From positions 62,001-126,000 of the IMG/VR virus record IMGVR_UViG_3300045256_000050: a stretch of 64,000 bases of DNA; one strand, written 5' to 3'. Positions 3,563 through 59,065 of this stretch are shown in pieces. A program made the translations under genes and the position numbers. Within the stretch, counting starts at the first letter, position 1. Every line of letters starts with the position of its first letter. The notes under the pieces are model-generated. The model worked only from the letters and a program-made list of their open reading frames with translations. It did not search any database and was not told the DNA's origin.

Positions 3563-6500
3563 TCTCCGATAGCATCAGAAGTTACGTTGACGTGATGAAC
3601 GGCGAGGAGTTGGCGAAAGCCCTCATGGCCGAAGTACGTCGTGACGCAGAGATTCGTGTTACCGACGACGACACTCACACCAAGCTCGACGACATCAAGC
3701 GTATTCTGGAAAATTGGGACAAGAACCTCACCAAAGAACTTAAGGAACTGTCCGATACGGTCGAACGCAACTTGAAGGAGTTGGCGAACCGTGTGCCGGG
3801 TGCTTCTACGTCTGCCGCCAAGACCAAGCCGCTCAATATGGGCAACCTCGCTGTGGTCATGGGCCGGACCTACAACGCCATCAACAACCTGAACAAGACA
3901 CTCCTCGGCGGCATCAACATTAACATGTCGAAGGCCGTCGAACGTGCCCTCGCCGGGGGTGGCGGCGGTGGAGGGGGCGGCGGTGCCGGTCCTACTGGTG
4001 GTGGAGGAGGGGGCGGTGGCGGGGGTTCCTTGCCTGCTGCTCTCGGTGACGCCGGGGACGCAGAAGCGAAGCGGATGACGAAGATCACGGGCGTGTTGGT
4101 GGCGACGAACATGGTCGTCAACAAGGCTCTCGGGATGCTCTCCAGTGGCCTCCAGAAGATCGGCCTCGACTGGCAAAACACGTTCAAAGGCATCGGGGAC
4201 GGGGTAAAGTTCACTCAAGACATGCGTATGTTCGCCTACGAAACGCAGGGTGCGGGCGTGGCGATGACGAACATGGAGCGTGAGTACATCAACCTCGCCA
4301 ACGTGGCAAGAGAAACGGGCCAGGAGTGGGGCAAGGCCGCAACCCTGTACCGGAAGGAAATGCAGCGTGGCTTGACCACGGAAGTCGTGGCCGGACGGGT
4401 GCATCAACGGACCGCCCAAGATGCGATGAGATTGACTAAGAACAGCTTGCGTACCGCCAACATGATCGGTGCGTCCGCCGAAGGTACGGCCGAGTTGTTC
4501 AGCGAGTGGAACCGGCACCTGGGGTTGACCAACGAGCAGTTGAGCTTCGTGGGTCGTGAAATGGAACAGGTTGCCCGGAACAGCGGCGTGACCGGCGACG
4601 AACTGTTGCAGGCCACGAAGGCTGCGTCCGTTCTCGTTAAGGAAGTCCGAAACTTCGCCGGTATCAGCCAGCAGGCTATGGCCCAGATCATTCAGACCCA
4701 GACTTCGTTGCAGAAGTTCGGTGCTGAAGACATCGGGGCACGGTTCAACCAAGCTATGTCCCAGGGTGTTCGTACTCTCGCACAGGCCGAGCCAGCCATC
4801 GCAAGCATCATCGCCGAGTCGGCACAGCGGGCGGGTCAGAGCATGACCGGCTCGATGTTGACGGGCGGACAGCAGCAGCGGCGGATGCAGCAAGAGATCA
4901 TGCGGACCCTGCGAGGGCGTTTGGCTTCCATCGGTCTTGGCGGCGTAGACCCATCTCAGTTGCTTGACCGACTCCAGCAGATGCGTGACGCCGGTCAGGA
5001 CACGGGCGTTCTTGAACAACAGATTCGGAACGTCACGGGTATGGGTGCCGGTGAACTTCAGAACTTGTACAAGGCGTACCAAGAATCCTCCATGTCGTTC
5101 GGCGACCGGATGAGAGGGTTCGAGGAACGCATCAACCGGGCCACAACCCCAGAAGGTCGTCAGCTTGCCGAGCGGCAGCGTGACACGTTCGTTCAGACCG
5201 ACCGTCGGCAGCAGGCGTCTCAGTTGACCGACCTGCTCAGCAGTCGTGGCAACTTGGGGCAGGCGTTGGAACAGTTCAACCAGCGGATGCGGCGGGAAGG
5301 CCGTGCCGACGCACAGCTACAAGGCCCGGAAGCGGCAGCGAGACTTATTCAACAAAGCGTCGGCGACCTTGCCAACAGAAGCCGGGCGTCCGGTGTCGAT
5401 TTCAACGCCGCACTACGCCGACGTGGTTTGACGCAGGAAGGGTTGCAGCGTGGGTTGCTTGACCCGGCGTCGGCCCGTGAATTCGGTGCGATCTTGCAGG
5501 AGGTTGAGAACGAGGTAATGACCCAGGAACGGGCCAACCAAGACCCGGTGGCGAAGGCCAACCTGGAGTTGAAGAAGGTTAACGAAATGTTGACCCAGGC
5601 CGTGACACGGCTTTATACGGCGTTTGCATCCTTCGAACTCATCATGGGTGCGGCTGTTGCACTGATGGCGGCTAAGGCGGGCATGGGCCTGTTGAGCCTG
5701 CCGACGGGTCTGCTCGGCCGTGGCGGAAGAATGCTTGGCGGTTTGGGTCGTGGTGCCGGTCGCATGTTGGGTATCGGCGGACGTGCAGGTGCCACCGTTG
5801 CTGCCGAAGCCGGGACTGCCGCAGCCGGTCAAGTTGCCGGGCGTGCCGCTGGTGCAGCCGCAGGTCGGGCCGGTGGTGCTGTTGCTGGACGTGCTGCCGG
5901 TGCAGCCGCTCCGGGTCTACTCGGACGGGCTGGTGCGGGCCTCGCAGGTATGGCGGGTCGTGCCGGTGCCGGTCTTATGGGTGCAGGCCGGGCAGTCGGC
6001 GGCGTTGCAATGCGTGCCGGTGGTGCTGTCGCTCGTGTTGCTGGCGGCGTCGGTAGCCGTGTGCTGGGTGCGATGGGTGTTAAGGCACTCGCCGGGGCCG
6101 GTGCTAAGGTCGCAGGTCTTGCTCTTGGTGCAAGCAACCCGATTGGCTGGGTCGTTACCCTCGCTACGGCGTTGGGCGGCGGCTTCGTCAACGCTATGGA
6201 AGCGGCAAGCAAAGCTACCGAAATCTTCAACGTTCGGCAGGAAGAACTCACCTACACGCAGAAGGCGGCTGCCAAGTCGGCTGGCTTCTTGACGGGTATT
6301 CTGGACTTCATCACGTTCGGTATCTTCTCCGAGTACATCGGGCCGACGGGCACATGGACCGTGGCCCTCGCCAAGTTCTTCGACAAGTTCTGGCCGCTCG
6401 CCCTGCTGGGTGACATGTTGCTCAAGCCGTTCGAAGTGTTGTGGGCGGTCATCAAGGGTATCGGTCTGGGCATTTGGGAATACTGGAAGGGTCTGTGGGA

Positions 6501-35049: not shown

Positions 35050-35292
35050 ATGCCTCAGCGTATTACACCCGTGAAGGTCATGTCCGTGAGCCAGAATGGC
35101 GAGTGCCATCTGACGATCACGTTGGAGTTGAACATCAATTTGACCGCCAACGGTGAGATCGGTGCGTCACTGCAAGCTCAGGGAGAGAAGCCTATGAAAG
35201 CCCGGCCGATTCAGGAAGACGATGATGTCGAACTTACGGTCCCGGATTTCGTATCGGGTATGAAGCTGGACTTTGGTAAACAAGTGGAGTGA
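35050..35292 (+). CDS. Small hypothetical protein
   Basis: 80-aa ORF directly upstream of the actin-like gene. Confidence 0.7.
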   Translation: MPQRITPVKVMSVSQNGECHLTITLELNINLTANGEIGASLQAQGEKPMKARPIQEDDDVELTVPDFVSGMKLDFGKQVE

Positions 35293-35297
35293 AAGAA

Positions 35298-36308
35298 ATG
35301 GCTATTGGATTCGACGCCGGAACCTACAACTTGGTGTGCTGCCACCGCAACGATAAGGGAGACTTCCTTTACCGCCGGGAGGTTAACGCCTTCTTGGAAA
35401 TGCCTCTTGAGAACAAGTTCGTCTACAACATGATGAAGAAGGCAGGCGTGCCGCTGATCCTCCGGGAAGATGCGAACGTCGCCTACGCCATCGGTGAGGC
35501 CGCTGTCGAGATGGCTTACACGATGCCCCAGATCGAGCTTCGCCGCCCGATGAAGGACGGCTGTGTCAACCCGAAGGAGCGTGACGCTTTTCAAATCTTG
35601 AACATCATGGCCCACAGCCTGATCGGGGACGTTGCGGAAGACAAGACGACCCTGTACTACTCCGTCCCGGCCAACGCCGTGAACACAGAGACGGACGCTG
35701 ACTACCACCGCAAGATTCTCGACGCCATCTTCAAGGCGTACAAGAGCAAGAATGGGTACATCGTCAACGCCCACCCGATCAACGAAGCCCTCGCCCTGAT
35801 CTACGCCGAGTTGGCGAACAAGGCGTTCACGGGCATCGGCATCAGCTTCGGGGCCGGTATGGTCAACCTGTGTTACTCGATCTTCGCCGCCCCGGTGTTC
35901 CAGTTCTCGCTGGTCAACTCGGGCGACTGGATCGACAAGCAGGCCGCTAAGGCTCTCGGCGAGAGCGTGGCGTTCGTCAACAAGGAGAAGACGAAGATTG
36001 ACCTGGGCAAAGAGCCGACGAACAACACCGAGCGGGCCATCGGCACTCAGTACAAGCTCATGATCGAGAAGACCGTCGCCGGGATCAAGAAGGGTCTGGA
36101 AGACAGCAAGAAGGGTAACACCGCCGAGGCCGTTGACGTGGTGATCGCCGGTGGCACGTCGAGTCCTCCGGGCTTCGACAAGCTGTTCGAGACGGTGCTG
36201 CGTGAGGCCGAACTGCCGATCAAGATTGGCAAGGTCATCCGCCCGGCCGACCCGCTGTACAGTGTGGCCCGTGGCTGCCTCGTAGCAGCGGAGAACGCCA
36301 ATGTCTAA
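35298..36308 (+). CDS. Actin-fold ATPase (MreB/FtsA/ParM-like)
   Basis: Phosphate-1 IGFDAGT, phosphate-2-like GISFGAG, adenosine motif IAGGTS, terminal PLYSVARGCL. Confidence 0.85.
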   Translation: MAIGFDAGTYNLVCCHRNDKGDFLYRREVNAFLEMPLENKFVYNMMKKAGVPLILREDANVAYAIGEAAVEMAYTMPQIELRRPMKDGCVNPKERDAFQILNIMAHSLIGDVAEDKTTLYYSVPANAVNTETDADYHRKILDAIFKAYKSKNGYIVNAHPINEALALIYAELANKAFTGIGISFGAGMVNLCYSIFAAPVFQFSLVNSGDWIDKQAAKALGESVAFVNKEKTKIDLGKEPTNNTERAIGTQYKLMIEKTVAGIKKGLEDSKKGNTAEAVDVVIAGGTSSPPGFDKLFETVLREAELPIKIGKVIRPADPLYSVARGCLVAAENANV

Positions 36309-36726: not shown

Positions 36727-37191
36727 ATGGCAGCTAACATGTTTGGAATCGATATGGAAGAGAGTTTCTTGGATCACGACGAAGTGGTCAAGATGCTGGA
36801 GGCGGCGGGCACCCGATGTGCCTGGGATTTCAACACGGCCCTGGGCGACACGATCCGTGAGAAGTACGAATCCCTGTACATCAAGGTTGTGGAAGTCACC
36901 AACGTCCTGATTCGTAAGGGGGCGAGCGGGTTGTTCTGGATTTGTGCCTCGCCGGAAGTCGCCTCGATCTTCGAGGTTGCGACGATGGGCTTCTACCCGA
37001 CCAGTGCGGAACAGATCGAGTTGGGCACCAAGAAGGTTTACAAGCTCGGGGTCATGCAACGCCGGTGGAGCATCTACGTTGACCCGTCGCTCGACGGCAA
37101 CAAGGTTTTGATCGGGTGTGGCGAACACAAGATGCACGAGGGCGACGAAAAGAGCTACGCCGCAATGACCGTGGCTAACTTTGTCATCTGA
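36727..37191 (+). CDS. Small protein paralogous to the C-terminal half of gp23 major capsid protein
   Basis: WICASPEVASIF...GVMQRRWSIYVDP...NKVLIG resembles gp23-family FII.S..VAS.L...G.L.G.Y.VY.D...VGYKG. Confidence 0.7.
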   Translation: MAANMFGIDMEESFLDHDEVVKMLEAAGTRCAWDFNTALGDTIREKYESLYIKVVEVTNVLIRKGASGLFWICASPEVASIFEVATMGFYPTSAEQIELGTKKVYKLGVMQRRWSIYVDPSLDGNKVLIGCGEHKMHEGDEKSYAAMTVANFVI

Positions 37192-37862: not shown

Positions 37863-38363
37863 ATGGTTGAAGAACGTACCTTTATCCACAAGTTCGTGAA
37901 CGACTTGGGCGTTGCCGCCTACCTGCTGATGCACGGGTACACCGTGATCGGGAAGAAGGCTAAGTCGATCTTCTTCGAGTGTCATAACGAAGAAGAGGCC
38001 CAGGAGTTCGATAAGATGGTTCTCGAATATCAGCCGCCAAACGAGTTCTACACGTTTGATAGCTGTCTGATGTTCTTGAAGAAGATCAACGAGCAAGTCC
38101 CTGCTCAACTGGACGATTCCATCCACAAGGTCGTCAGTGACCTGGGTGTGGCTGCGTACTTGCTAATGCACGAGTACCGGCCGAATGCGATGGGCCTGAA
38201 GGTGATCGGGAAGCGTGGTAAGCACGTTTACTTCGAGCATCCGGCTGGTCGGGGCGAGGACTTCAAGCGGCTGAGCTACGAGTATCTGCCGAGCCAGTTC
38301 CAGACCTACGACAGCAACCTCATGGCATTGAAGAAGATTGGGGAATATCTACCCGACGAGTGA
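37863..38363 (+). CDS. Tandem two-domain protein (DUF5659-like)
   Basis: Internal duplication IHKFVNDLGVAAYLLMHGY / IHKVVSDLGVAAYLLMHEY. Confidence 0.7.
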   Translation: MVEERTFIHKFVNDLGVAAYLLMHGYTVIGKKAKSIFFECHNEEEAQEFDKMVLEYQPPNEFYTFDSCLMFLKKINEQVPAQLDDSIHKVVSDLGVAAYLLMHEYRPNAMGLKVIGKRGKHVYFEHPAGRGEDFKRLSYEYLPSQFQTYDSNLMALKKIGEYLPDE

Positions 38364-38388: not shown

Positions 38389-38410
38389 ATCATTCGAGAG
38401 GGGAAACGTT

Positions 38411-41005
38411 ATGCTATTGAGTTTTGACGATTTCCGAAAGACTCGGCGGCAATCCGCCATTGCCGAGTCTTCGGTACTGGAAGCAATCGACCACATGTTC
38501 GACCAGTTCAAGGTCGATCTGTCCGAGTCCGCACGGCTCAACGTCGTTCTTACTGAACACTACGACCCGCTGGCACATTTCGTAATGGAATCGGTTCTGC
38601 GGGAAGACGAGCGTCAAAACAAAATCTTCCTCGAAGCCTACATCGACTACTGCAAAAAGAACTTCCATAACTACATTATCGAGGCGACCAGCACGGGCGG
38701 GGCGTTCGACGCAACTGCGTTGAAGAAGAACCTCGTCAATGCACTGAACCAATTCTCCAAGCAGGTTAAGGTTCAGATCGCCAAGATCATCAATACATCT
38801 CGTACATCAGCCGATCCGTCAGCGGATTCGTCTTTAAGTCCTCCTCCTCATTCTCACAGCGGAGACGAGGGCGGGTCGGCTGGTATTACACCCCCAGGTC
38901 CGAGTGGTATGCCGAAACCGGCAACCGCCGCTGGGTTGGCGGGGGCAGGGTTCAAACCTGCCGGTTCCGCCTCGACTCCACCGTCTGCCCCGGCACCGGG
39001 TTCTGAAGAAGAAGCCCCGACATCCGCAGCCGCACCGGCACCCAAGAAGGGAGGCTGGCCGTGGCGGCGTTTCGATACGTCTAAGGGCAACCTCCTGAGC
39101 CGTGGCCTGAAGGGCGTGGCGAACCTCGTTCGCACCCCGCTCCATTGGGCTGCTAACAAAATCCGTAGTGCGTGGAGAGGCGACAGCCTGCCCGAAAACG
39201 TCGTCAATGCGATGGCCCTCCTGTTGGAAGAGGCCGCTAACGAGCAGCTTGAGAAGCTGATGAAGGACGTTGACGAGTTGACGGCAACTCTTGAGAAATA
39301 CATCAGCGACCAGATCGACAAGTACGCTGCGGCCCTCGGTGCGATGCCGAAGCCGACCGGCCCGACTGGCACGCCTGAAGTGACCCCGACCGGCCCGGCC
39401 GGTGCCGCTGATGCGGTCAAGCCGGAAGCTCCGGCCGAGAAGGCATTGCCGCCTGAGAAAGTTGCAGCCGCTACGGGCGTTGACCCCGAAGCTGCTAAGG
39501 CTGGTGCGGCTGAAGGTGCAGACCCGCTCGCAGAACGGGTGAAGTTCCTGAAGTCCATCCTCGGCGGGCATCGGTTGAACAACTCGTTCCTGAAGGCTCT
39601 CCAGGCCGCACTGACGAGCGTGGACAGCGGGGCCGCTATCCGTGCCCGGCCGATGATTAAGAAACTGATCGCTGGCATCGCCAGCGACACTCCGAACGAC
39701 GACTGGAGTCGGTTCGGCGGCACCGCTAAGAAGTGGCGTAGTCGGGCCATCCCGGCTATGGATATTCTGAAGCAGGCCGTGTACAACGCCATGCAGAAGA
39801 AGAACGCCGGTCAGCCGGTTGACCTGTCCGACGAGATCATCGACCTGATGCGTAACGAGGACAAGCGGGCGAAGGTAGACATGGCTGGCATCTTTGACAA
39901 GATCAAGGGTAAGGCCGCTGCCGCTACCGGCACCACGCCTCCGGCCGCAAGCACGCCGCCGCCTGCTGGCTCTAAGCCAGCAGCAGGTTCGCCGCTCCCG
40001 AAGCCGCCGCTTCCGGGTACGGCACCGATGGATACCCGTAAGCCGGGTCAGCCGCCAGCCCCGGTTAGCGGCACGGCCCCAGGGGCGGGTGCGTCGAAGA
40101 TTAAGGGCGATGCCAACACCGACGTGACTGGCAGCGGTACACAAACCGTCAACGTGAACGGCAAAGAAGTTGATCCGACGACTGCTGTGAAGGCGGTGGT
40201 GGCAAGCGTCACGAACGCCAAGCCGGGTTCGCCGCTCGAAGTCTTCGCCGACATGGACGAGAACGACGACTTCTTCACCAAGTACCTGCCGCCGCTCGCA
40301 CAGCGGGCCGTCAGCCTGTCCTTGTTGAAGAACGACCCGTTGACGCCGGACAAGATCGTTGAACTGGTGAAGGCGGCTGTTCGCAACACGAAGGACAAGG
40401 TTCCGTTCCCACCGGAAGTGCTGGCGTTCGCCGGGGTTGATGCAACTCCGTCGTCCACGCCTCCGGCAAAGCGTCCGGGGTCTGAAGCCCCGACCGCTGC
40501 TCCCGAGGCTGGCAAGGTTGCTCCTGAAGCCAAGCCGGAAGCCGGTAAGCCAGAAGCACCGAAGGTTGCTCCTGAAGCCAAGCCGGAAGCCGGTAAGCCA
40601 GAAGCCCCGAAGGCTGGCGGCATGAAGATGTCGGAAGACCCGAATGCCCAGAAGGCGTTGGAAGCGTACCTCGCTGCTAAGAACCCGAAGGCTGCGGGCA
40701 ACGCACACTACCCGGTTTCGATCCGGCTGACGGCCATCCGTAACGCTATGGCGAAGGACGGCCTGGGTTCGATTGAAGAACTGGAAGGCATGTCGCCGGA
40801 ACAACTGGCACTCAAGATTAAGGGTGCGGAAGTCGGCGTAGAGAAGCCGACCGAAGCCCCGAAGGAAACTCCGAAGGAGGCTCCAAAGGAAGCCCCGAAG
40901 CCAGAGGCTAAGAAGGGCGAGGAGAAGAAGCCGGAAGAGAAGAAGGAAGCTCCGAAGCCGGAAGAGAAGAAGAAGGACGGCGAGGGCGACGTAAAAAAAA
41001 AGTAA
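38411..41005 (+). CDS. Large Pro/Ala/Lys-rich low-complexity protein, putative internal head protein (864 aa)
   Basis: N-terminus MLLSFDDF; TATATAA 29 nt upstream; capsid-like codon usage. Confidence 0.8.
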   Translation: MLLSFDDFRKTRRQSAIAESSVLEAIDHMFDQFKVDLSESARLNVVLTEHYDPLAHFVMESVLREDERQNKIFLEAYIDYCKKNFHNYIIEATSTGGAFDATALKKNLVNALNQFSKQVKVQIAKIINTSRTSADPSADSSLSPPPHSHSGDEGGSAGITPPGPSGMPKPATAAGLAGAGFKPAGSASTPPSAPAPGSEEEAPTSAAAPAPKKGGWPWRRFDTSKGNLLSRGLKGVANLVRTPLHWAANKIRSAWRGDSLPENVVNAMALLLEEAANEQLEKLMKDVDELTATLEKYISDQIDKYAAALGAMPKPTGPTGTPEVTPTGPAGAADAVKPEAPAEKALPPEKVAAATGVDPEAAKAGAAEGADPLAERVKFLKSILGGHRLNNSFLKALQAALTSVDSGAAIRARPMIKKLIAGIASDTPNDDWSRFGGTAKKWRSRAIPAMDILKQAVYNAMQKKNAGQPVDLSDEIIDLMRNEDKRAKVDMAGIFDKIKGKAAAATGTTPPAASTPPPAGSKPAAGSPLPKPPLPGTAPMDTRKPGQPPAPVSGTAPGAGASKIKGDANTDVTGSGTQTVNVNGKEVDPTTAVKAVVASVTNAKPGSPLEVFADMDENDDFFTKYLPPLAQRAVSLSLLKNDPLTPDKIVELVKAAVRNTKDKVPFPPEVLAFAGVDATPSSTPPAKRPGSEAPTAAPEAGKVAPEAKPEAGKPEAPKVAPEAKPEAGKPEAPKAGGMKMSEDPNAQKALEAYLAAKNPKAAGNAHYPVSIRLTAIRNAMAKDGLGSIEELEGMSPEQLALKIKGAEVGVEKPTEAPKETPKEAPKEAPKPEAKKGEEKKPEEKKEAPKPEEKKKDGEGDVKKK
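40514..40612 (+). repeat. 48-bp tandem duplication (KVAPEAKPEAGKPEAP x2)
   Basis: AAGGTTGCTCCTGAAGCCAAGCCGGAAGCCGGTAAGCCAGAAGC at 40514 and 40562. Confidence 0.95.
40982..41005 (+). other. Candidate -1 programmed frameshift / slippage site (A9 run, A_AAA_AAG)
   Basis: Codons GTA AAA AAA AAG TAA; GAGGG 9 nt upstream of the heptamer; -1 frame open to 41280. Confidence 0.6.
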
Positions 41006-41280
41006 TTGACGCCGGAGACGAGTATGTCGCCCCCGACAGCGTGGACGCAGTGATCGATAACGTGAGCGACGAAGACTTGCTCGGCAAGGTCGATGTGGTG
41101 CTGGGTAGCCGCTGGGGCGAAAAGTTCAGAGACTACCTGCAAGACATGCTCGACCAGGAGATGACGGGCACGCCCGACAAACTGGTCAGACGTGCCCTGG
41201 CTAAAGTCTCTGCGGCTCGGAAGGCGAAGAAGAATCGGTTCGCCGACGATCACGACGACGACGCCTGGGGTGAAGACTAA
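41002..41280 (+). CDS. -1 frame extension (about 92 aa) of the 38411 gene, or a separate small ORF from GTG 41041
   Basis: Open frame VIDAGDEYVAPDSVDAVIDNVSDEDLL...WGED; no SD near GTG 41041. Confidence 0.6.
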   Translation, partial: VIDAGDEYVAPDSVDAVIDNVSDEDLLGKVDVVLGSRWGEKFRDYLQDMLDQEMTGTPDKLVRRALAKVSAARKAKKNRFADDHDDDAWGED

Positions 41281-41738
41281 CGCTTCTTGTTGTCGAAGCC
41301 TTCTTTCGATTGCTTCGCCAACTGCGTCAGACGCCGAATATCAACGAACGCCGCCTCTTGCTGGGGCGGCGTTTCTTCTTTTACGGCCGGGGGCGTGGCG
41401 GTGGTCGGGGCAAGGTGCGGACTCACGTCGCTGACGACCTTCTTGCCGGACTTCTTCTCGTACTCCTCGATCATCTTTCGGTGTTCGGGGTTGTTCACCG
41501 GGTCCAGCACGATCTCCTCTTGGATGCTGATGACGCTCTGCATCGGGAAGAAGGCGACGGTCCCGTTGTAGGGGTGCGTCCCCCAGATGCACTCACGGCC
41601 GATTTCCTGAACTTCCACAACGAAGTGTTCTCGGGCGAACGTCTCGTTGAACTCACGGTTGATGGGGCTGGTCAGGATGGTGCAGACCTTGCCCTTGAAG
41701 TATTGCAGCCTCTCGACTGTCTTGGCGGTGATTTCCAT
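41277..41738 (-). CDS. Hypothetical protein
   Basis: 153-aa ORF with GAGG SD. Confidence 0.75.
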   Translation of the reverse strand: MEITAKTVERLQYFKGKVCTILTSPINREFNETFAREHFVVEVQEIGRECIWGTHPYNGTVAFFPMQSVISIQEEIVLDPVNNPEHRKMIEEYEKKSGKKVVSDVSPHLAPTTATPPAVKEETPPQQEAAFVDIRRLTQLAKQSKEGFDNKKR

Positions 41739-43954: not shown

Positions 43955-44203
43955 ATGAACGAAACGATTGTGTGCCCGACGTACATCCTGACCGACACGA
44001 CGCAGATTGCTTGTCACGGGATGAGCTTCCCGTCGGTCGAAGATGCGATTGCTTACGCCAAGCAGTTGCAGGAGTTGGGGCTGTGTCAAACGTTTACCGT
44101 CGGAGGTTACTCCGACGGCAAGTACGTTAACGTCTTTACTTCTTCCCCGGAGTCGGGATATAGTCCGGCGGATACTGTCCTTGCGGGTTGTTTCGGTCTT
44201 TGA
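43955..44203 (+). CDS. Small hypothetical protein
   Basis: 82-aa ORF with AAGGA SD; 3' end overlaps the convergent protease gene. Confidence 0.55.
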   Translation: MNETIVCPTYILTDTTQIACHGMSFPSVEDAIAYAKQLQELGLCQTFTVGGYSDGKYVNVFTSSPESGYSPADTVLAGCFGL

Positions 44204-45077
44204 TCGGAATACGGCGAACCGGATTCTGACCAACCTCGTTCAACCAGTCGTACCCGTTGATCTTATTCTGATTACGGACGGTTCCTAGTGGGGTGAACAG
44301 GCCGATGCCGTTGCCGGTCTTATCGGACGTACCCCAACAGATACCGACGTAATACCCGTCGTCACTCATCAGCCCGCCGCCGGACCGCCCCGGCCGTGGG
44401 CTGTTGTTCTTCGTAATCAAATCCTGGTACTGGCCCCGAGCGGCCTGCATACCGACGACCTGTACTTCGTAGTGGGCAACTTCCCGCCCGCCGTCACATC
44501 CGACCGAGTGCAACTGCGTCCCTGCGTTGAGGGTGTAGTTCTCAGGGGCAATCGGGAAGTAGTCCGGTGCGTAGTCCGGGTTGAACTTCACGAGGCTGCT
44601 GTCCCGACCACGGTCGTTGCAGTAGTACAGCACGGTGCCCTTGTAGGTCTTCGTTTGCGGAAGCTTGTTCATGTTCTGATACCAGATGATGATCTCGCAT
44701 TCCACGTTCTTCTTCTTAGCCTCCTCGCCAGACATGTTCCCGTTCCACAAGTGGCCGCAGGACTGGACGTAGGCGGTGTTATCCTTCGTGTCGTAGTAGA
44801 CGATGGTGCCTGAACCGGACGCCCCACGGACGCCGATCTTCACCGACGGTGCGAGCCACTTGCGCACGGCCTCGTCCCGCTGTTCGATGGGAGCCATGTT
44901 GCTCCCATAGATCGCAAGCGGGTGGTCCGGCACAACAGGCATGCCCTCGATCAATTGAAAGTTCCCGTAGTCACGCTGAACCACGGGCGGCTTTACTTGT
45001 TTATCTGAGACGACCACGATGGTCATGCACAGTAAACTCAGGGCGATGGACGTAATGGCAATAGCTATTTTCTTCAT
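44136..45077 (-). CDS. Trypsin-like serine protease with signal peptide
   Basis: SGSGTIV, SCGHLW (His), RDSSLV (Asp), PGRSGGGL (Ser); hydrophobic N-terminus. Confidence 0.9.
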   Translation of the reverse strand: MKKIAIAITSIALSLLCMTIVVVSDKQVKPPVVQRDYGNFQLIEGMPVVPDHPLAIYGSNMAPIEQRDEAVRKWLAPSVKIGVRGASGSGTIVYYDTKDNTAYVQSCGHLWNGNMSGEEAKKKNVECEIIIWYQNMNKLPQTKTYKGTVLYYCNDRGRDSSLVKFNPDYAPDYFPIAPENYTLNAGTQLHSVGCDGGREVAHYEVQVVGMQAARGQYQDLITKNNSPRPGRSGGGLMSDDGYYVGICWGTSDKTGNGIGLFTPLGTVRNQNKINGYDWLNEVGQNPVRRIPIKDRNNPQGQYPPDYIPTPGKK

Positions 45078-56488: not shown

Positions 56489-59065
56489 ATGGCTTGGTAC
56501 GATTTCTTCAAGCTTTTTACACGGGCGTTCCAGAACGACCCGCTCGCCCAGAAAGACGGGCGGGACTTCCCGAACGCCGGTGTTTCACAACCGGACGCCA
56601 TGCCCGACGTGCGGGCGATGGCCGACGGCACGCTGGGTGGCCGTGGGTCCGTTCGCCTTCGTGACACGAACGAGATGGTTGACCTGTCCACGGTCACGAA
56701 CCGCCTCCACCGTTATAAAGAGTACGAGCGGTTGCGAAACATGCCCGAGATCGAGATGGCGATGACCGTCTTCGCCGACGAGGCGTGTCTGGCGGGCGAT
56801 ACTAAGATCGCTACCCCGGCATACGACGGGGGGTTTCGCACTCTCGAATGGCTCGCAGAGAACAAGAAGGGCGAACGCTTCCTGGTATATTGCTGGGACT
56901 TCGCAAAAGAAGACTACACGTTGGGCTGGGCCTACGACCCCCGGCTCGTTAAGGAAGAGGAAACCGTCCGGGTCATGCTCGACGACGGTAGCTCGTTCGT
57001 CGCCACCCGTGACCACCGTATCTTGACTAAGGATCAGAAGTGGCGGAACGCAGGCGAACTGAAGGAAGGCGACCTGCTGATGCCGTTCTACCGGGTGAAC
57101 CCTCGGGTCGGCGAGGATCAGCCGAAGGTCCGCCAGTTCCCCCGAATCTTCACCAACCGCAAGGGGTGGATCAACGAGCGGCAGTTCGTGGACGAATGGA
57201 AGACCGGCCGGGACGACCCGTTCTACGAGAAGGGTAACAAGTTCTGCCGAATGCTGTGCGAGGGCTTGACCGTCCGTCAAATCTACGGCGGCGGGCACGG
57301 CGACTTCGACACGATCAAACGGCACATGGAGAAGTGCGGGTTTAGTAACGCTGAACTCAAACAACTGGCGAAGAAGGAACCGGCTCGGCGGGTGATCGGG
57401 GTTGCCCCGAACGGCGTCCAGAAGGTGTACGACCTGTCGGTTGAGAAGCACGAGAACTTCTGCACGGATTGGGGTGTAGCCCACAACTGCCAGAAGGACG
57501 ACAGCGGCCGGGCGTTCCAGATCGTTTGCAAGAACCAGGACATTCAAGAAGAACTGGAGTTCCTGTGCTTCCACCGCAAGATGCTGAACCTGGATCAGAA
57601 GAAGTGCTGGAACCGGGCGAAGCAGTTGTTCATCAACGGCGACGACTTCTGGGAAGTCGTGATCGACCCGGAGAACCCGTCTCGGGGCATCGTTAACATC
57701 GTCCCGCTCCCGCCGGACACGATGTACCGTATTGAAACCACGAAGGGGCGGCTGGTCGAGTTCCAGCAGTCTAAAGAAGGCCCGGACTACGATTCGCTGG
57801 CCCGTGTCGAGGTTACGAAAGCGACTGACCTGGACTTGATGCAGGCGAAGGCCATCCGGTTTGCGCCTCAGCAGATCGTCCACATCCGTATCGGCGACGA
57901 CCGGAAGACGTTCTACCCGTATGGTGTTTCACTGATCGAAGCCGCCCGTGGCCCGGCCCACCAGTTGCGGCTGATGGAAGACGCCATGTTGGTGTATCGG
58001 TTGACCCGTGCCCCAGAACGGCGTGTGTTCTATATTGATACACAACAGTACAGCGGTGCCCGTGCCGAAGCCTTCATCGAGCGGATGAAGGATCAGTTCA
58101 AGAAGAAGAAGGTTCCGAAGCAGTTCAACGCCGAAGGGGCGAGTGCGGTTGAAGAACGGTGGCACGCACCGGCTGCGGACGAGGACTACTGGATTCCGAT
58201 CCGGCCGAACTCGAACACCCGTATCGAAACCCTCCCAGGGGCACAGAACTTGGGCGAAATCGACGATACGGTCTACTTCCGTAACAAGCTGTTCGTGTCG
58301 ATGAACTTCCCGAAGAACTACTTCAACAACGAGGACGCCCAGGCGACCAGAATCAGCCTGTCCGCCCAGGACGTGAAGTTCGCCCGGATGATCGAGCGGC
58401 TTCAGAGCCACATGGAAGACGGGCTGTGGGAACTGTGTGACCGCCACCTGAAGCTCCGTGGGTATCCCGAGGAGATGTACGAAGACCTTGAGATCAAGAT
58501 GACCCCGCCGAGCGATTGGCGGGAACTCACCCGGTCCGAGGTTGTTACGGCTCGCATCGGTAACGCCGGGTCGTTGAAGGGTTCTCAGTTGATGAGCGAC
58601 TTCGACATCCTGACGAAGTGGATGAAGTACCCGGACGACGAGGCCAAGATCATGCTGGCCCGGCTGAAGATTCAGAAGATCGAAGACCTGAAGTTGCAGA
58701 TCATCGCCCAGAACCCGCAGTTGTTGGGTGTTGGTCTACCGTCGGATGACGAACAACAGGTCGGTGCCGAGGCCGGGTTGGGCCAGCCGATGTTGGGCGG
58801 CGACCCGATGGCTGGTGGCGGTGCCCCTCCGGGCGGTATGCCACCGGCTCCGGGTGGTGCCCCGATGGGTGGCGCTCCTGGTGCGGCCCCGCCGCCTCCG
58901 GGTGGCGGTATGCCTGGGATGAGCATGGCGGCGGAAACCCCGCCTGTGGGTGGCGGTCAGCCGCTCCCCCAACCGGCGTTGGACGACATCGCCAAGTACG
59001 ACCTGGAGATCAAGGATTACGGGTCGGAGCAGGACGAAGAAGAGATCGACAACTCGGAGATGTAA
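56489..59065 (+). CDS. gp20: Portal protein (T4 gp20-like) with intein
   Basis: PEIEMAM..FADEA, FINGDDFWE, QLRLMEDAMLVYRLTRAPERRVFYID, EDYWIPIR...IETLPGAQNLGEIDD. Confidence 0.95.
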   Translation: MAWYDFFKLFTRAFQNDPLAQKDGRDFPNAGVSQPDAMPDVRAMADGTLGGRGSVRLRDTNEMVDLSTVTNRLHRYKEYERLRNMPEIEMAMTVFADEACLAGDTKIATPAYDGGFRTLEWLAENKKGERFLVYCWDFAKEDYTLGWAYDPRLVKEEETVRVMLDDGSSFVATRDHRILTKDQKWRNAGELKEGDLLMPFYRVNPRVGEDQPKVRQFPRIFTNRKGWINERQFVDEWKTGRDDPFYEKGNKFCRMLCEGLTVRQIYGGGHGDFDTIKRHMEKCGFSNAELKQLAKKEPARRVIGVAPNGVQKVYDLSVEKHENFCTDWGVAHNCQKDDSGRAFQIVCKNQDIQEELEFLCFHRKMLNLDQKKCWNRAKQLFINGDDFWEVVIDPENPSRGIVNIVPLPPDTMYRIETTKGRLVEFQQSKEGPDYDSLARVEVTKATDLDLMQAKAIRFAPQQIVHIRIGDDRKTFYPYGVSLIEAARGPAHQLRLMEDAMLVYRLTRAPERRVFYIDTQQYSGARAEAFIERMKDQFKKKKVPKQFNAEGASAVEERWHAPAADEDYWIPIRPNSNTRIETLPGAQNLGEIDDTVYFRNKLFVSMNFPKNYFNNEDAQATRISLSAQDVKFARMIERLQSHMEDGLWELCDRHLKLRGYPEEMYEDLEIKMTPPSDWRELTRSEVVTARIGNAGSLKGSQLMSDFDILTKWMKYPDDEAKIMLARLKIQKIEDLKLQIIAQNPQLLGVGLPSDDEQQVGAEAGLGQPMLGGDPMAGGGAPPGGMPPAPGGAPMGGAPGAAPPPPGGGMPGMSMAAETPPVGGGQPLPQPALDDIAKYDLEIKDYGSEQDEEEIDNSEM
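56786..57487 (+). mobile_element. Intein (234 aa) in the portal protein
   Basis: Block A CLAGDTKI, block B VATRDHRIL, block F VYDLSVEKHENF, terminal HN followed by +1 Cys. Confidence 0.95.

What the first reader, a model, noticed from the sequence alone, without database searches (positions are those of the whole stretch)
40982..41280. Canonical A_AAA_AAG -1 frameshift candidate at the stop of the 864-aa low-complexity gene
The gene ends GTA AAA AAA AAG TAA although nearby lysines are almost all AAG, so the A9 run stands out. A_AAA_AAG is the slippery heptamer of E. coli dnaX and many IS elements. An SD-like GAGGG lies 9 nt upstream, similar to the dnaX stimulator. The -1 frame stays open for about 92 acidic/helical residues and has no good start of its own. 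Inference: two isoforms (about 864 and 955 aa) made by ribosomal frameshifting or by transcriptional slippage on A9. It is not in the usual tail-chaperone location. I saw only a weak downstream hairpin.
Basis: partly seen in the sequence, partly recalled or inferred. Interest (0 to 1): 0.72.

Follow-up and report, generated by a model that had tools for sequence, protein, structure and literature searches.

The report
Conserved poly-A slippage site, two isoforms
A run of nine A's at the end of an 864-residue gene of a huge hot-spring phage is a conserved slippage site that very probably lets the phage make the protein both without and with a 92-residue tail domain, a known kind of trick in a new gene family.

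Summary
The gene 38411..41005 ends GTA AAA AAA AAG TAA, and the -1 frame stays open for 92 codons to 41280.

I found eight lineages below 85% nucleotide identity to each other.
- All carry an A run (A7 to A11) at exactly this junction. It is the only A run of 7 or more in most loci.
- In three lineages the body and the C-terminal domain form one open frame.
- In five lineages, the window included, the domain lies in the -1 frame.
- Every lineage has T-R-A-N-T-G-A directly after the run, which puts stops in both non-extension frames.
- The extension is under strong purifying selection right from the run, even between two out-of-frame lineages (dN/dS 0.08).
- Three out-of-frame lineages have no start codon at the junction.
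- A9 is reproduced in four assemblies.

No RNA structure or SD-like stimulator is conserved, and run lengths of 9 to 11 exceed what a heptamer needs. I therefore favour RNA polymerase slippage, as in Thermus dnaX and tssM, with -1 ribosomal frameshifting as a possible contributor. No RNA or protein data were available.

The protein family has no known function. This is a new member of a known kind.

The parts
38396..38403 (+). Shine-Dalgarno-like GAGAGGGG, 7 nt before the ATG of the body ORF
   Evidence: the start at 38411 matches the N-terminus MLLSFDDF / MLISFDDF of homologs P0001 and P0002
38411..41005 (+). Body ORF, 864 aa (the short isoform). Small helical domains joined by Pro/Ala-rich disordered linkers. 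Ends ...GEGDVKKK then TAA
   Evidence: AlphaFold model of homolog P0002. No Pfam or PHROG family
40982..40986 (+). Present here and in L008/L009 but not conserved as a motif in the other lineages
40993..41001 (+). A9 homopolymer, the slippage site. It contains the in-phase heptamers A_AAA_AAA and A_AAA_AAG (40996-41002)
   Evidence: The same junction carries A7 to A11 in eight lineages. A9 is reproduced in a second IMG/VR contig and in Logan contigs of two runs
41003..41009 (+). TAATTGA: TAA stops the body frame and TGA (41007-41009) stops the third frame. Only the -1 frame continues. The motif T-R-A-N-T-G-A is invariant in all lineages
   Evidence: The rare codons GTA (7% of Val) and ATT (18% of Ile) create it. 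Only 3.9% of comparable tripeptides in this genome carry both out-of-frame stops
41002..41280 (+). Extension ORF in the -1 frame, 92 codons plus TAA. It encodes an acidic linker and a small four-helix domain with the motif LDQ-x-TGTPDKLV-RA. Joined to the body it gives the 956-aa long isoform
   Evidence: alignment A1; purifying selection; pLDDT 74-95 in P0002 and 78-88 in the stand-alone model
41346..41374 (+). Terminator-like 12-bp GC-rich hairpin followed by a T-rich tail. It is the first such site after the gene and lies beyond the extension ORF, not between body and extension
   Evidence: consensus scan only
41277..41738 (-). Convergent conserved 153-aa gene whose stop overlaps the stop of the extension ORF. 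The same arrangement is found in every relative, and it served as the anchor to find them

Best explanation
The body ORF (38411..41005) and the 92-codon -1 ORF (41002..41280) are one gene that makes two proteins. Faithful transcription and translation of the A9 run end at TAA and give the 864-aa short form. Some mRNAs gain one extra A when RNA polymerase slips on the nine-base rA:dT hybrid. In those the frame runs GTA AAA AAA AAA GTA ATT GAC... and the 956-aa long form is made, carrying a C-terminal four-helix domain. Ribosomes shifting -1 on A_AAA_AAG would give the identical protein and may contribute. Stops placed in both other frames directly after the run ensure that every mRNA or ribosome not in the extension frame ends at the same point, so only two products arise. 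Shown here: the anatomy, its conservation, and selection on the extension. Inferred: that slippage happens, which machine slips, and the isoform ratio. The protein's function is unknown. By its architecture and neighbours I guess it is a flexible multi-domain scaffold or adaptor of the phage's intracellular or assembly machinery, whose C-terminal domain adds one more binding module.
For: (1) Homologs fuse the two parts. P0002 (956 aa, 45% identical) reads ...DGDEKKKVSDP... through an A11 run in one frame. L006 and L013-L015 (A10 and A11) and L012 (A7) are also in frame.
(2) Out-of-frame lineages all put the extension in -1: window A9; L005, L007, L016 and L008/L009 A10.
(3) The run is the only A run of 7 or more in most loci and goes against codon bias.
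(4) T-R-A-N-T-G-A after the run is invariant, and is rare for such tripeptides elsewhere in this genome.
(5) There is purifying selection in the extension frame from the first codon after the run. For the 13 codons before any start codon, window against L006 gives pS 0.82 and pN 0.13. Between two out-of-frame lineages, L007 against L016, dN/dS is 0.078 at dS 1.5.
(6) The window, L007 and L016 have no start codon at the junction.
(7) The frame state changed at least twice among lineages while the extension stayed intact.
(8) A9 is identical in four assemblies, and L013-L015 give A11 in three samples.
(9) For RNA polymerase rather than the ribosome: seven of eight lineages have 9 to 11 A's, at or above the length reported to give efficient slippage (PMC5009743). 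No RNA structure is conserved. In-frame lineages keep the long run plus stops in both other frames, as in Thermus thermophilus dnaX (PMC5009743). Both polarities occur, as in tssM of Citrobacter rodentium and Yersinia pseudotuberculosis (PMC4256274).
Against: There are no RNA or protein data. No RNA run holds this phage, and the DNA runs are kept only as contigs, which hide minority run lengths. Every out-of-frame lineage also has an in-phase X_XXY_YYZ heptamer followed within 0 to 1 codons by a 0-frame stop, so -1 ribosomal frameshifting fits equally well. L012 has only A7, too short for efficient polymerase slippage but enough for a ribosomal shift. All five out-of-frame lineages need exactly one more A, which is also what a systematic homopolymer undercount would produce. 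Host, host tRNA-Lys set and transcribing polymerase are unknown, and no tRNA-Lys or RNAP was found in the 245 kb, which is only about 48% of the genome. Default and minor isoforms swap between lineages, so a fixed ratio cannot be essential.
Confidence: 0.8

Rival explanations
1. Programmed -1 ribosomal frameshifting on A_AAA_AAG (dnaX or IS type) is the main route to the long isoform, and the mRNA is faithful.
For: An in-phase heptamer is present in all five out-of-frame lineages, and the needed shift is always -1. A 0-frame stop lies 0 to 1 codons after the heptamer. SD-like GAGGG sits 9 nt upstream in the window and in L008/L009. L012 keeps only A7, exactly a heptamer. A_AAA_AAG is reported as the most shift-prone heptamer in E. 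coli (PMC5009743).
Against: No downstream hairpin or pseudoknot is conserved: single-sequence z-scores run from -1.8 to +1.7, and the alignment gives zero consensus pairs. The SD-like word is not conserved and the whole linker is purine-rich. Selection for 9 to 11 A's is not explained by a 7-nt signal. Efficiency depends on the host having a single tRNA-Lys, which is unknown.
Confidence: 0.27
2. Homopolymer miscount: the real genome has A10 and a single 956-aa ORF, so the stop is an assembly artefact.
For: All out-of-frame lineages would be mended by exactly one extra A. The data are metagenomic assemblies of about 10-12x depth. The four assemblies of the window lineage come from one or a few related hot-spring samples.
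Against: A9 is identical in two IMG/VR contigs and in Logan contigs of two separate runs, with no indel reported. L008 and L009 give A10 in two runs. L013-L015 give A11 in three samples, so runs of this length are assembled reproducibly. A plain ORF would have no reason to keep a slippery run against codon bias or to keep stops in both other frames.
Confidence: 0.06
3. The extension is a separate small gene translated by its own initiation or by termination-reinitiation. There is no fusion protein.
For: Gene callers annotate separate ORFs. GTG overlaps the TGA stop (GTGA) in L005 and L008/L009. The window has GTG at 41041.
Against: The window, L007 and L016 have no start codon at the junction. 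The first start in L007 lies 36 codons in, after conserved residues. Codons before the first start are under purifying selection. There is no SD before GTG 41041. Three lineages are fused in frame.
Confidence: 0.05
4. Heritable phase variation: the run is a DNA-level contingency locus. Replication slippage switches phage sub-populations between short-default and long-default states, and this switching, not RNA or ribosome slippage, is what selection maintains.
For: The frame state differs between fairly close lineages: L004 A11 is in frame, while L007 and L016 A10 are out, at 81-84% nt identity. The window is out against L006/L013 in, at 78%. Both states co-occur in one hot-spring sample.
Against: Within a lineage the length is stable across samples and assemblies. 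The extension is strongly conserved between two out-of-frame lineages at saturated dS, which needs expression while out of frame. Contigs cannot show minority lengths, so this is not really tested. It is not exclusive of the main explanation.
Confidence: 0.1

Closest known systems
Thermus thermophilus dnaX (tau/gamma by transcriptional slippage on a 9-base homopolymer; as reviewed in PMC5009743)
   Same: A homopolymer of about 9 lies inside a coding region. Stop codons follow closely in both non-zero frames, so all off-frame mRNAs give one truncated product. The result is two isoforms that share the N-terminus and differ by a C-terminal part. The in-frame lineages here (L004, L006/L013) have exactly this layout.
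   Different: In the window the polarity is reversed: the genomic frame gives the short form and slippage gives the long one. The protein is unrelated, this is a phage gene, and no transcript data exist here.
tssM of the type VI secretion system: Citrobacter rodentium tssM1 (A11, out of frame) and Yersinia pseudotuberculosis tssM3 (A9, in frame) (PMC4256274)
   Same: A poly-A run directly precedes a premature stop, and the C-terminal domain is encoded in another frame. Relatives carry the same run in frame, so recoding yields the long form in one and the short form in the other. No SD-like or structural stimulators are present.
   Different: In tssM the slippage was demonstrated by mass spectrometry of cDNA and by western blot, whereas here it is only inferred. 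Here eight lineages show the pattern with an invariant double-stop motif. The protein families are unrelated.
E. coli dnaX -1 programmed ribosomal frameshift (A_AAA_AAG with upstream SD and downstream stem-loop)
   Same: The same heptamer is used, with an SD-like GAGGG about 9-10 nt upstream in the window and a stop close to the shift site. Both make two isoforms with a common N-terminus.
   Different: In dnaX the shift makes the short form, and it depends on a strong 3' stem-loop. Here no conserved structure exists, the SD-like word is not conserved, and the run is longer than the heptamer.
Phage tail assembly chaperone G/GT-type -1 frameshift
   Same: It is a conserved phage recoding event giving a C-terminally extended minor product.
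   Different: The genomic position is wrong: the neighbours are an actin-like gene and a primase, not major tail and tape measure genes. The body is 864 aa rather than about 100-150 aa, and there is no similarity to chaperone families.

Membership tests
Programmed transcriptional slippage sites (dnaX-Thermus / tssM / IS-element type) | Homopolymeric A or T run of about 9 or more inside a coding region | tested here: met
   A9 at 40993-41001. Seven of eight related lineages have A9 to A11 and one has A7
Programmed transcriptional slippage sites (dnaX-Thermus / tssM / IS-element type) | The run is conserved at the same position in diverged relatives although it is disfavoured by codon usage | tested here: met
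   Eight lineages at 58-85% nt identity carry it. AAA is 16% of Lys codons, and KKK is written A9 once in 46 cases
Programmed transcriptional slippage sites (dnaX-Thermus / tssM / IS-element type) | Alternative frames are arranged so that slipped and unslipped mRNAs give two defined products | tested here: met
   Invariant T-R-A-N-T-G-A closes both non-extension frames within 0 to 3 codons
Programmed transcriptional slippage sites (dnaX-Thermus / tssM / IS-element type) | mRNA population heterogeneous in run length while the DNA is homogeneous | not testable with these tools
   No RNA run holds this phage. DNA runs are available only as contigs
Programmed transcriptional slippage sites (dnaX-Thermus / tssM / IS-element type) | Two protein products detected, with loss of one when the run is broken synonymously | not testable with these tools
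   Needs expression, western blot or MS
-1 programmed ribosomal frameshift, dnaX/IS type | X_XXY_YYZ heptamer in phase with the 0 frame, and a -1 frame that is open and coding | tested here: met
   A_AAA_AAG at 40996-41002. All out-of-frame lineages have an in-phase heptamer. The -1 ORF is under purifying selection
-1 programmed ribosomal frameshift, dnaX/IS type | Conserved 3' stimulatory stem-loop or pseudoknot 5-9 nt after the heptamer | tested here: not met
   100-nt downstream folds give z-scores of -0.2, -0.6, -0.65, -0.4, -1.8 and +1.7. RNAalifold finds 0 consensus pairs
-1 programmed ribosomal frameshift, dnaX/IS type | Conserved upstream SD-like stimulator at fixed spacing | tested here: inconclusive
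   GAGGG lies 9 nt upstream in the window and in L008/L009. Other lineages have AAGGA-type words at other spacings, and the whole linker is purine-rich
-1 programmed ribosomal frameshift, dnaX/IS type | Host decodes AAA and AAG with a single tRNA-Lys (UUU) | not testable with these tools
   The host is unknown. The phage fragment encodes only tRNA-Glu and tRNA-Leu
Phage tail assembly chaperone frameshift (G/GT) | Small chaperone gene located between the major tail or tube gene and the tape measure gene | tested here: not met
   Neighbours are a Volactin-like actin, a gp23-like fragment, a primase and a PD-(D/E)XK nuclease. Baseplate genes lie more than 20 kb upstream
Phase-variable contingency locus (DNA slipped-strand mispairing) | Run-length polymorphism within one strain or population | tested here: inconclusive
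   The same length is found in four assemblies of the window lineage and in three of L013-L015. Contigs drop minority variants, and the length differs only between lineages

The most novel reading that the evidence does not exclude
Homopolymer slippage is a general isoform-control device of this clade of huge T4-like phages, and the run length is an evolvable dial. Single-base changes of the run flip which isoform is the default; this happened at least twice among eight lineages. Slippage by the polymerase keeps the other isoform available in either state. The same genome has a second candidate: a T10 run in frame in an unrelated ORF, with a stop directly after it in one alternative frame and four codons later in the other (G000:C1:192212). 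More distant homologs of the protein keep an A9 or A10 run at another conserved KKK position. Together these would make a combined heritable and non-heritable rheostat for C-terminal modules.
Probability: 0.25. Interest if true: 0.7.

Novelty: new member of a known kind. Interest (0 to 1): 0.55.

Why it matters
The finding corrects the annotation. What gene callers split into an 864-aa gene and a 79-aa orphan is one gene with two products, and the same correction applies to at least four other lineages in public metagenomes.

It adds a well-supported natural case of poly-A recoding in huge phages. I found no paper in the held library that links transcriptional slippage to jumbo or huge phages.

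The natural series of in-frame and out-of-frame relatives with A7 to A11 is a ready-made experimental set. It could be used to separate polymerase slippage from ribosomal frameshifting and to ask whether the isoform ratio matters.

It also warns that homopolymer 'frameshifts' in metagenomic phage genomes should not be auto-corrected or dismissed as errors.

Tried and rejected
- Relatives by scanning. Scans of viral contigs with the body, the extension and the alignments found only the identical twin contig. Two metagenome-contig scans and one genome-contig scan found nothing. tblastn against cultured phages found nothing. Relatives came from the protein databases and from walking out from the conserved convergent neighbour gene.
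- Function. There are no Pfam or PHROG hits for the body, the extension or five homologs. The ESM Atlas gave only weak look-alikes, 0.63 at best. Foldseek of the C-terminal domain model against PDB and AFDB clusters gave nothing below E 0.5.
- RNA evidence. The only 'RNA' run offered was a wastewater library with a distant relative, probably present as DNA, and it was of no use.
- Stimulatory RNA structure. Downstream folds, upstream folds and the alignment fold showed nothing conserved. Upstream hairpins with z-scores of -1 to -3 end 3-6 nt before the run in some lineages but differ in shape, so I leave them as unproven.
- Pseudogene reading. Rejected on dN/dS 0.078 between two out-of-frame lineages.
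- Tail-chaperone reading. Rejected on gene context.
- Phage-encoded RNA polymerase. None was found in the 245-kb fragment, but the record is only about half a genome.
Full report
WHAT IS THERE

The window is bases 62001-126000 of a 244,986-bp IMG/VR virus record that CheckV rates about 48% complete. It is a huge phage from hot-spring or microbial-mat metagenomes. It carries a T4-type portal with an intein, a T4-type large terminase and baseplate genes.

The gene in question starts at ATG 38411 behind GAGAGGGG. This start matches the homologs' N-terminus. The gene encodes 864 aa and ends GAC GTA AAA AAA AAG TAA.

The A9 run (40993-41001) is the only A or T run of 7 or more in the 64-kb window and the longest A run in the 245 kb. 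In this genome AAA is 16% of lysine codons. In the gene the count is 11 AAA against 77 AAG.

The -1 frame is open from 41002 to 41280 (92 codons). Its first start codon is GTG 41041, and no SD precedes it. A single A9 in 64 kb is not significant by itself: 26 of 100 shuffles have one.

RELATIVES

Protein searches gave P0002 (956 aa, 45% identity) and P0003. A profile-free HMMER scan with the 92-aa extension gave P0005 to P0007. Homologs of the conserved convergent 153-aa neighbour led to further contigs. Reading the DNA gives eight lineages that are 58-85% identical in nucleotides.

Out of frame, with the extension in the -1 frame:
- window, A9: GTA AAA AAA AAG TAA
- L005, A10: CAA AAA AAA AAG GAG TGA
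- L007, A10: GAA AAA AAA AAG TAA
- L016, A10: the same as L007
- L008/L009, A10: GCA AAA AAA AAA GAG TGA, seen in two runs

In frame, as one ORF:
- L004 (= P0002), A11
- L006 (A10) and L013/L014/L015 (A11, from three samples, 99% identical to L006)
- L012, A7

P0002's C-terminus aligns with the window's -1 ORF at 49% identity, E 9e-17. In most loci the junction run is the only A run of 7 or more.

THE DOUBLE STOP

Directly after the run every lineage has T-R-A-N-T-G-A. The variants are TAATTGA, TAAGTGA, TGATTGA, TGAGTGA and TGACTGA. This places stops in both frames other than the extension frame.

In the window the motif is built from GTA (7% of Val codons) and ATT (18% of Ile codons). Only 3.9% of comparable V-(Axx)-(D/E) tripeptides in this genome carry both out-of-frame stops. 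The motif is therefore selected at the nucleotide level. Whatever the run length in an mRNA, there are only two outcomes: stop at the junction, or read on into the C-terminal domain.

THE EXTENSION IS EXPRESSED WHEN OUT OF FRAME

For the 13 codons between the run and the first possible start in the window, comparison with L006 gives pS 0.82 and pN 0.13. L007's first start lies 36 codons in, after invariant residues.

Between the two out-of-frame lineages L007 and L016 the extension has dN/dS 0.078 at dS about 1.5. The frame state changed at least twice on any tree of the eight lineages, yet no extension ORF is broken. This excludes a decaying pseudogene and a universal independent start. In L005 and L008/L009 a GTGA overlap would allow reinitiation, but the window, L007 and L016 have nothing comparable.

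IS A9 REAL?

A second IMG/VR contig is identical over 10.6 kb including A9. Logan contigs of two runs of a hot-spring sample span the run with no difference (records 4 and 10). L013-L015 reproduce A11 in three samples, and L008/L009 reproduce A10 in two runs.

Contigs cannot show minority lengths, and the window's assemblies may share a source. I therefore leave 6% for a miscount. Even then the conserved run and the double stop would mark a slippage site.

WHICH MACHINE SLIPS?

No downstream structure stands out: z-scores run from -1.8 to +1.7. The alignment has no consensus pair within 60 nt on either side of the run. Upstream hairpins are unremarkable and not alike.

Seven of eight lineages have 9 to 11 A's. 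Efficient slippage by bacterial RNA polymerase is reported at this length, and Thermus thermophilus dnaX uses it with nearby stops in both non-zero frames (PMC5009743). The pair of polarities seen here parallels tssM. C. rodentium tssM1 has A11 before a stop, and the long form was shown to come from transcripts with extra A's. Y. pseudotuberculosis tssM3 has A9 in frame and makes the short form at 15-25% (PMC4256274).

I therefore favour polymerase slippage, at about 0.55 of the total. A ribosomal -1 shift on A_AAA_AAG gives the same protein, fits every out-of-frame lineage and fits L012's A7, so I give it about 0.27 as the main route. It may well contribute alongside. The fragment encodes no tRNA-Lys and no recognisable RNA polymerase, so host enzymes probably act. 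The first terminator-like hairpin on the + strand lies after the extension, at 41346-41374.

WHAT THE PROTEIN IS

It matches no Pfam or PHROG family, has no cultured-phage relative and gives no structural match. AlphaFold models show small helical domains on long Pro/Ala-rich disordered linkers. The C-terminal part is a confident four-helix domain (pLDDT 74-95) carrying LDQ-x-TGTPDKLV-RA.

The gene order is conserved: Volactin-like actin, small genes, a 166-aa protein, this gene, then the convergent 153-aa gene and the primase. Function is unknown. A flexible scaffold or adaptor whose last module is dosed by slippage is my guess, not a result.

More distant homologs (L017, L018, L019/L020) share the N-terminal domain but not this C-terminal domain.

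VERDICT

This is a real and conserved recoding site. It is a new member of a known kind, found in a new family of huge-phage proteins.

Noticed in passing
G000:C1:192212-192221 (outside the window; L023:1713-1722): The genome's other long homopolymer is a T10 run lying in frame (ACT TTT TTT TTT AGT, read T-F-F-F-S) at residue ~213 of a 314-aa ORF (from its ATG) that has no Pfam family. One extra T gives TAG at once, and one T fewer gives a stop after four codons. The layout is the same as the poly-A site. T10 is reproduced in the twin IMG/VR contig L024. No diverged relatives were found.
   Followed up: partly
L018:6258-6266 (-) and L020:1548-1557 (-), L019:6042-6051 (-): Distant homologs that lack the TGTPDK domain carry an in-frame A9 (GTA AAA AAA AAG, GC 53% locus) and an in-frame A10 (GC 34% locus) at a homologous KKK position, about 190-275 residues before their C-termini. 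The post-run parts align from the first residue (E 9e-4). In L020 one alternative frame stops at once. This may be a second, older slippage site in the family, or chance in an A-rich Lys context.
   Followed up: partly
L007:4830-4840 (-): An A11 run on the coding strand lies in frame inside the Trypsin_2-like protease gene (4259..5200, -) of one relative. The window's ortholog (44136..45077, -) has no such run.
   Followed up: no
window 35289-36308 (+): A 339-aa actin-fold protein matches Pfam Volactin end to end (E 3.6e-68). That family is named after a Haloferax volcanii cell-shape actin. It is conserved next to this gene cluster in relatives L004 and L017. A volactin-type actin in a huge T4-like phage may deserve its own look.
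   Followed up: no
window 36727-37191 (+): A 154-aa ORF matches only the middle of the T4 gp23 major capsid profile (positions 191-311 of 376, E 1.6e-8). It is a stand-alone capsid-protein fragment or insertion-domain homolog.
   Followed up: no
window 56489-59065 (+): The T4-type portal protein (Portal_T4, E 5.7e-70) is interrupted by an intein splicing domain at about residues 156-333.
   Followed up: no
L004:2174-3331 (+) and L017:1579-2748 (-): TnpB / Cas12f-like (OrfB_IS605, Cas12f1-like_TNB) genes are inserted at different places of this conserved cluster in two relatives. They are absent from the window's cluster.
   Followed up: no
window 37863-38363 (+): The 166-aa protein just upstream of the gene is an internal duplication: the block DLGVAAYLLMH.Y...IGK...F.E occurs twice. 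It is conserved in all relatives, including the distant ones (164-172 aa), and has no family.
   Followed up: no
window 40842-41122, in the sequencing run X3: The same hot-spring sample holds a second lineage of this phage group (Logan contig of 1723 bases = L015, depth about 8) with an in-frame A11 version of the gene. It sits beside the window's out-of-frame A9 lineage (depth about 12).
   Followed up: yes
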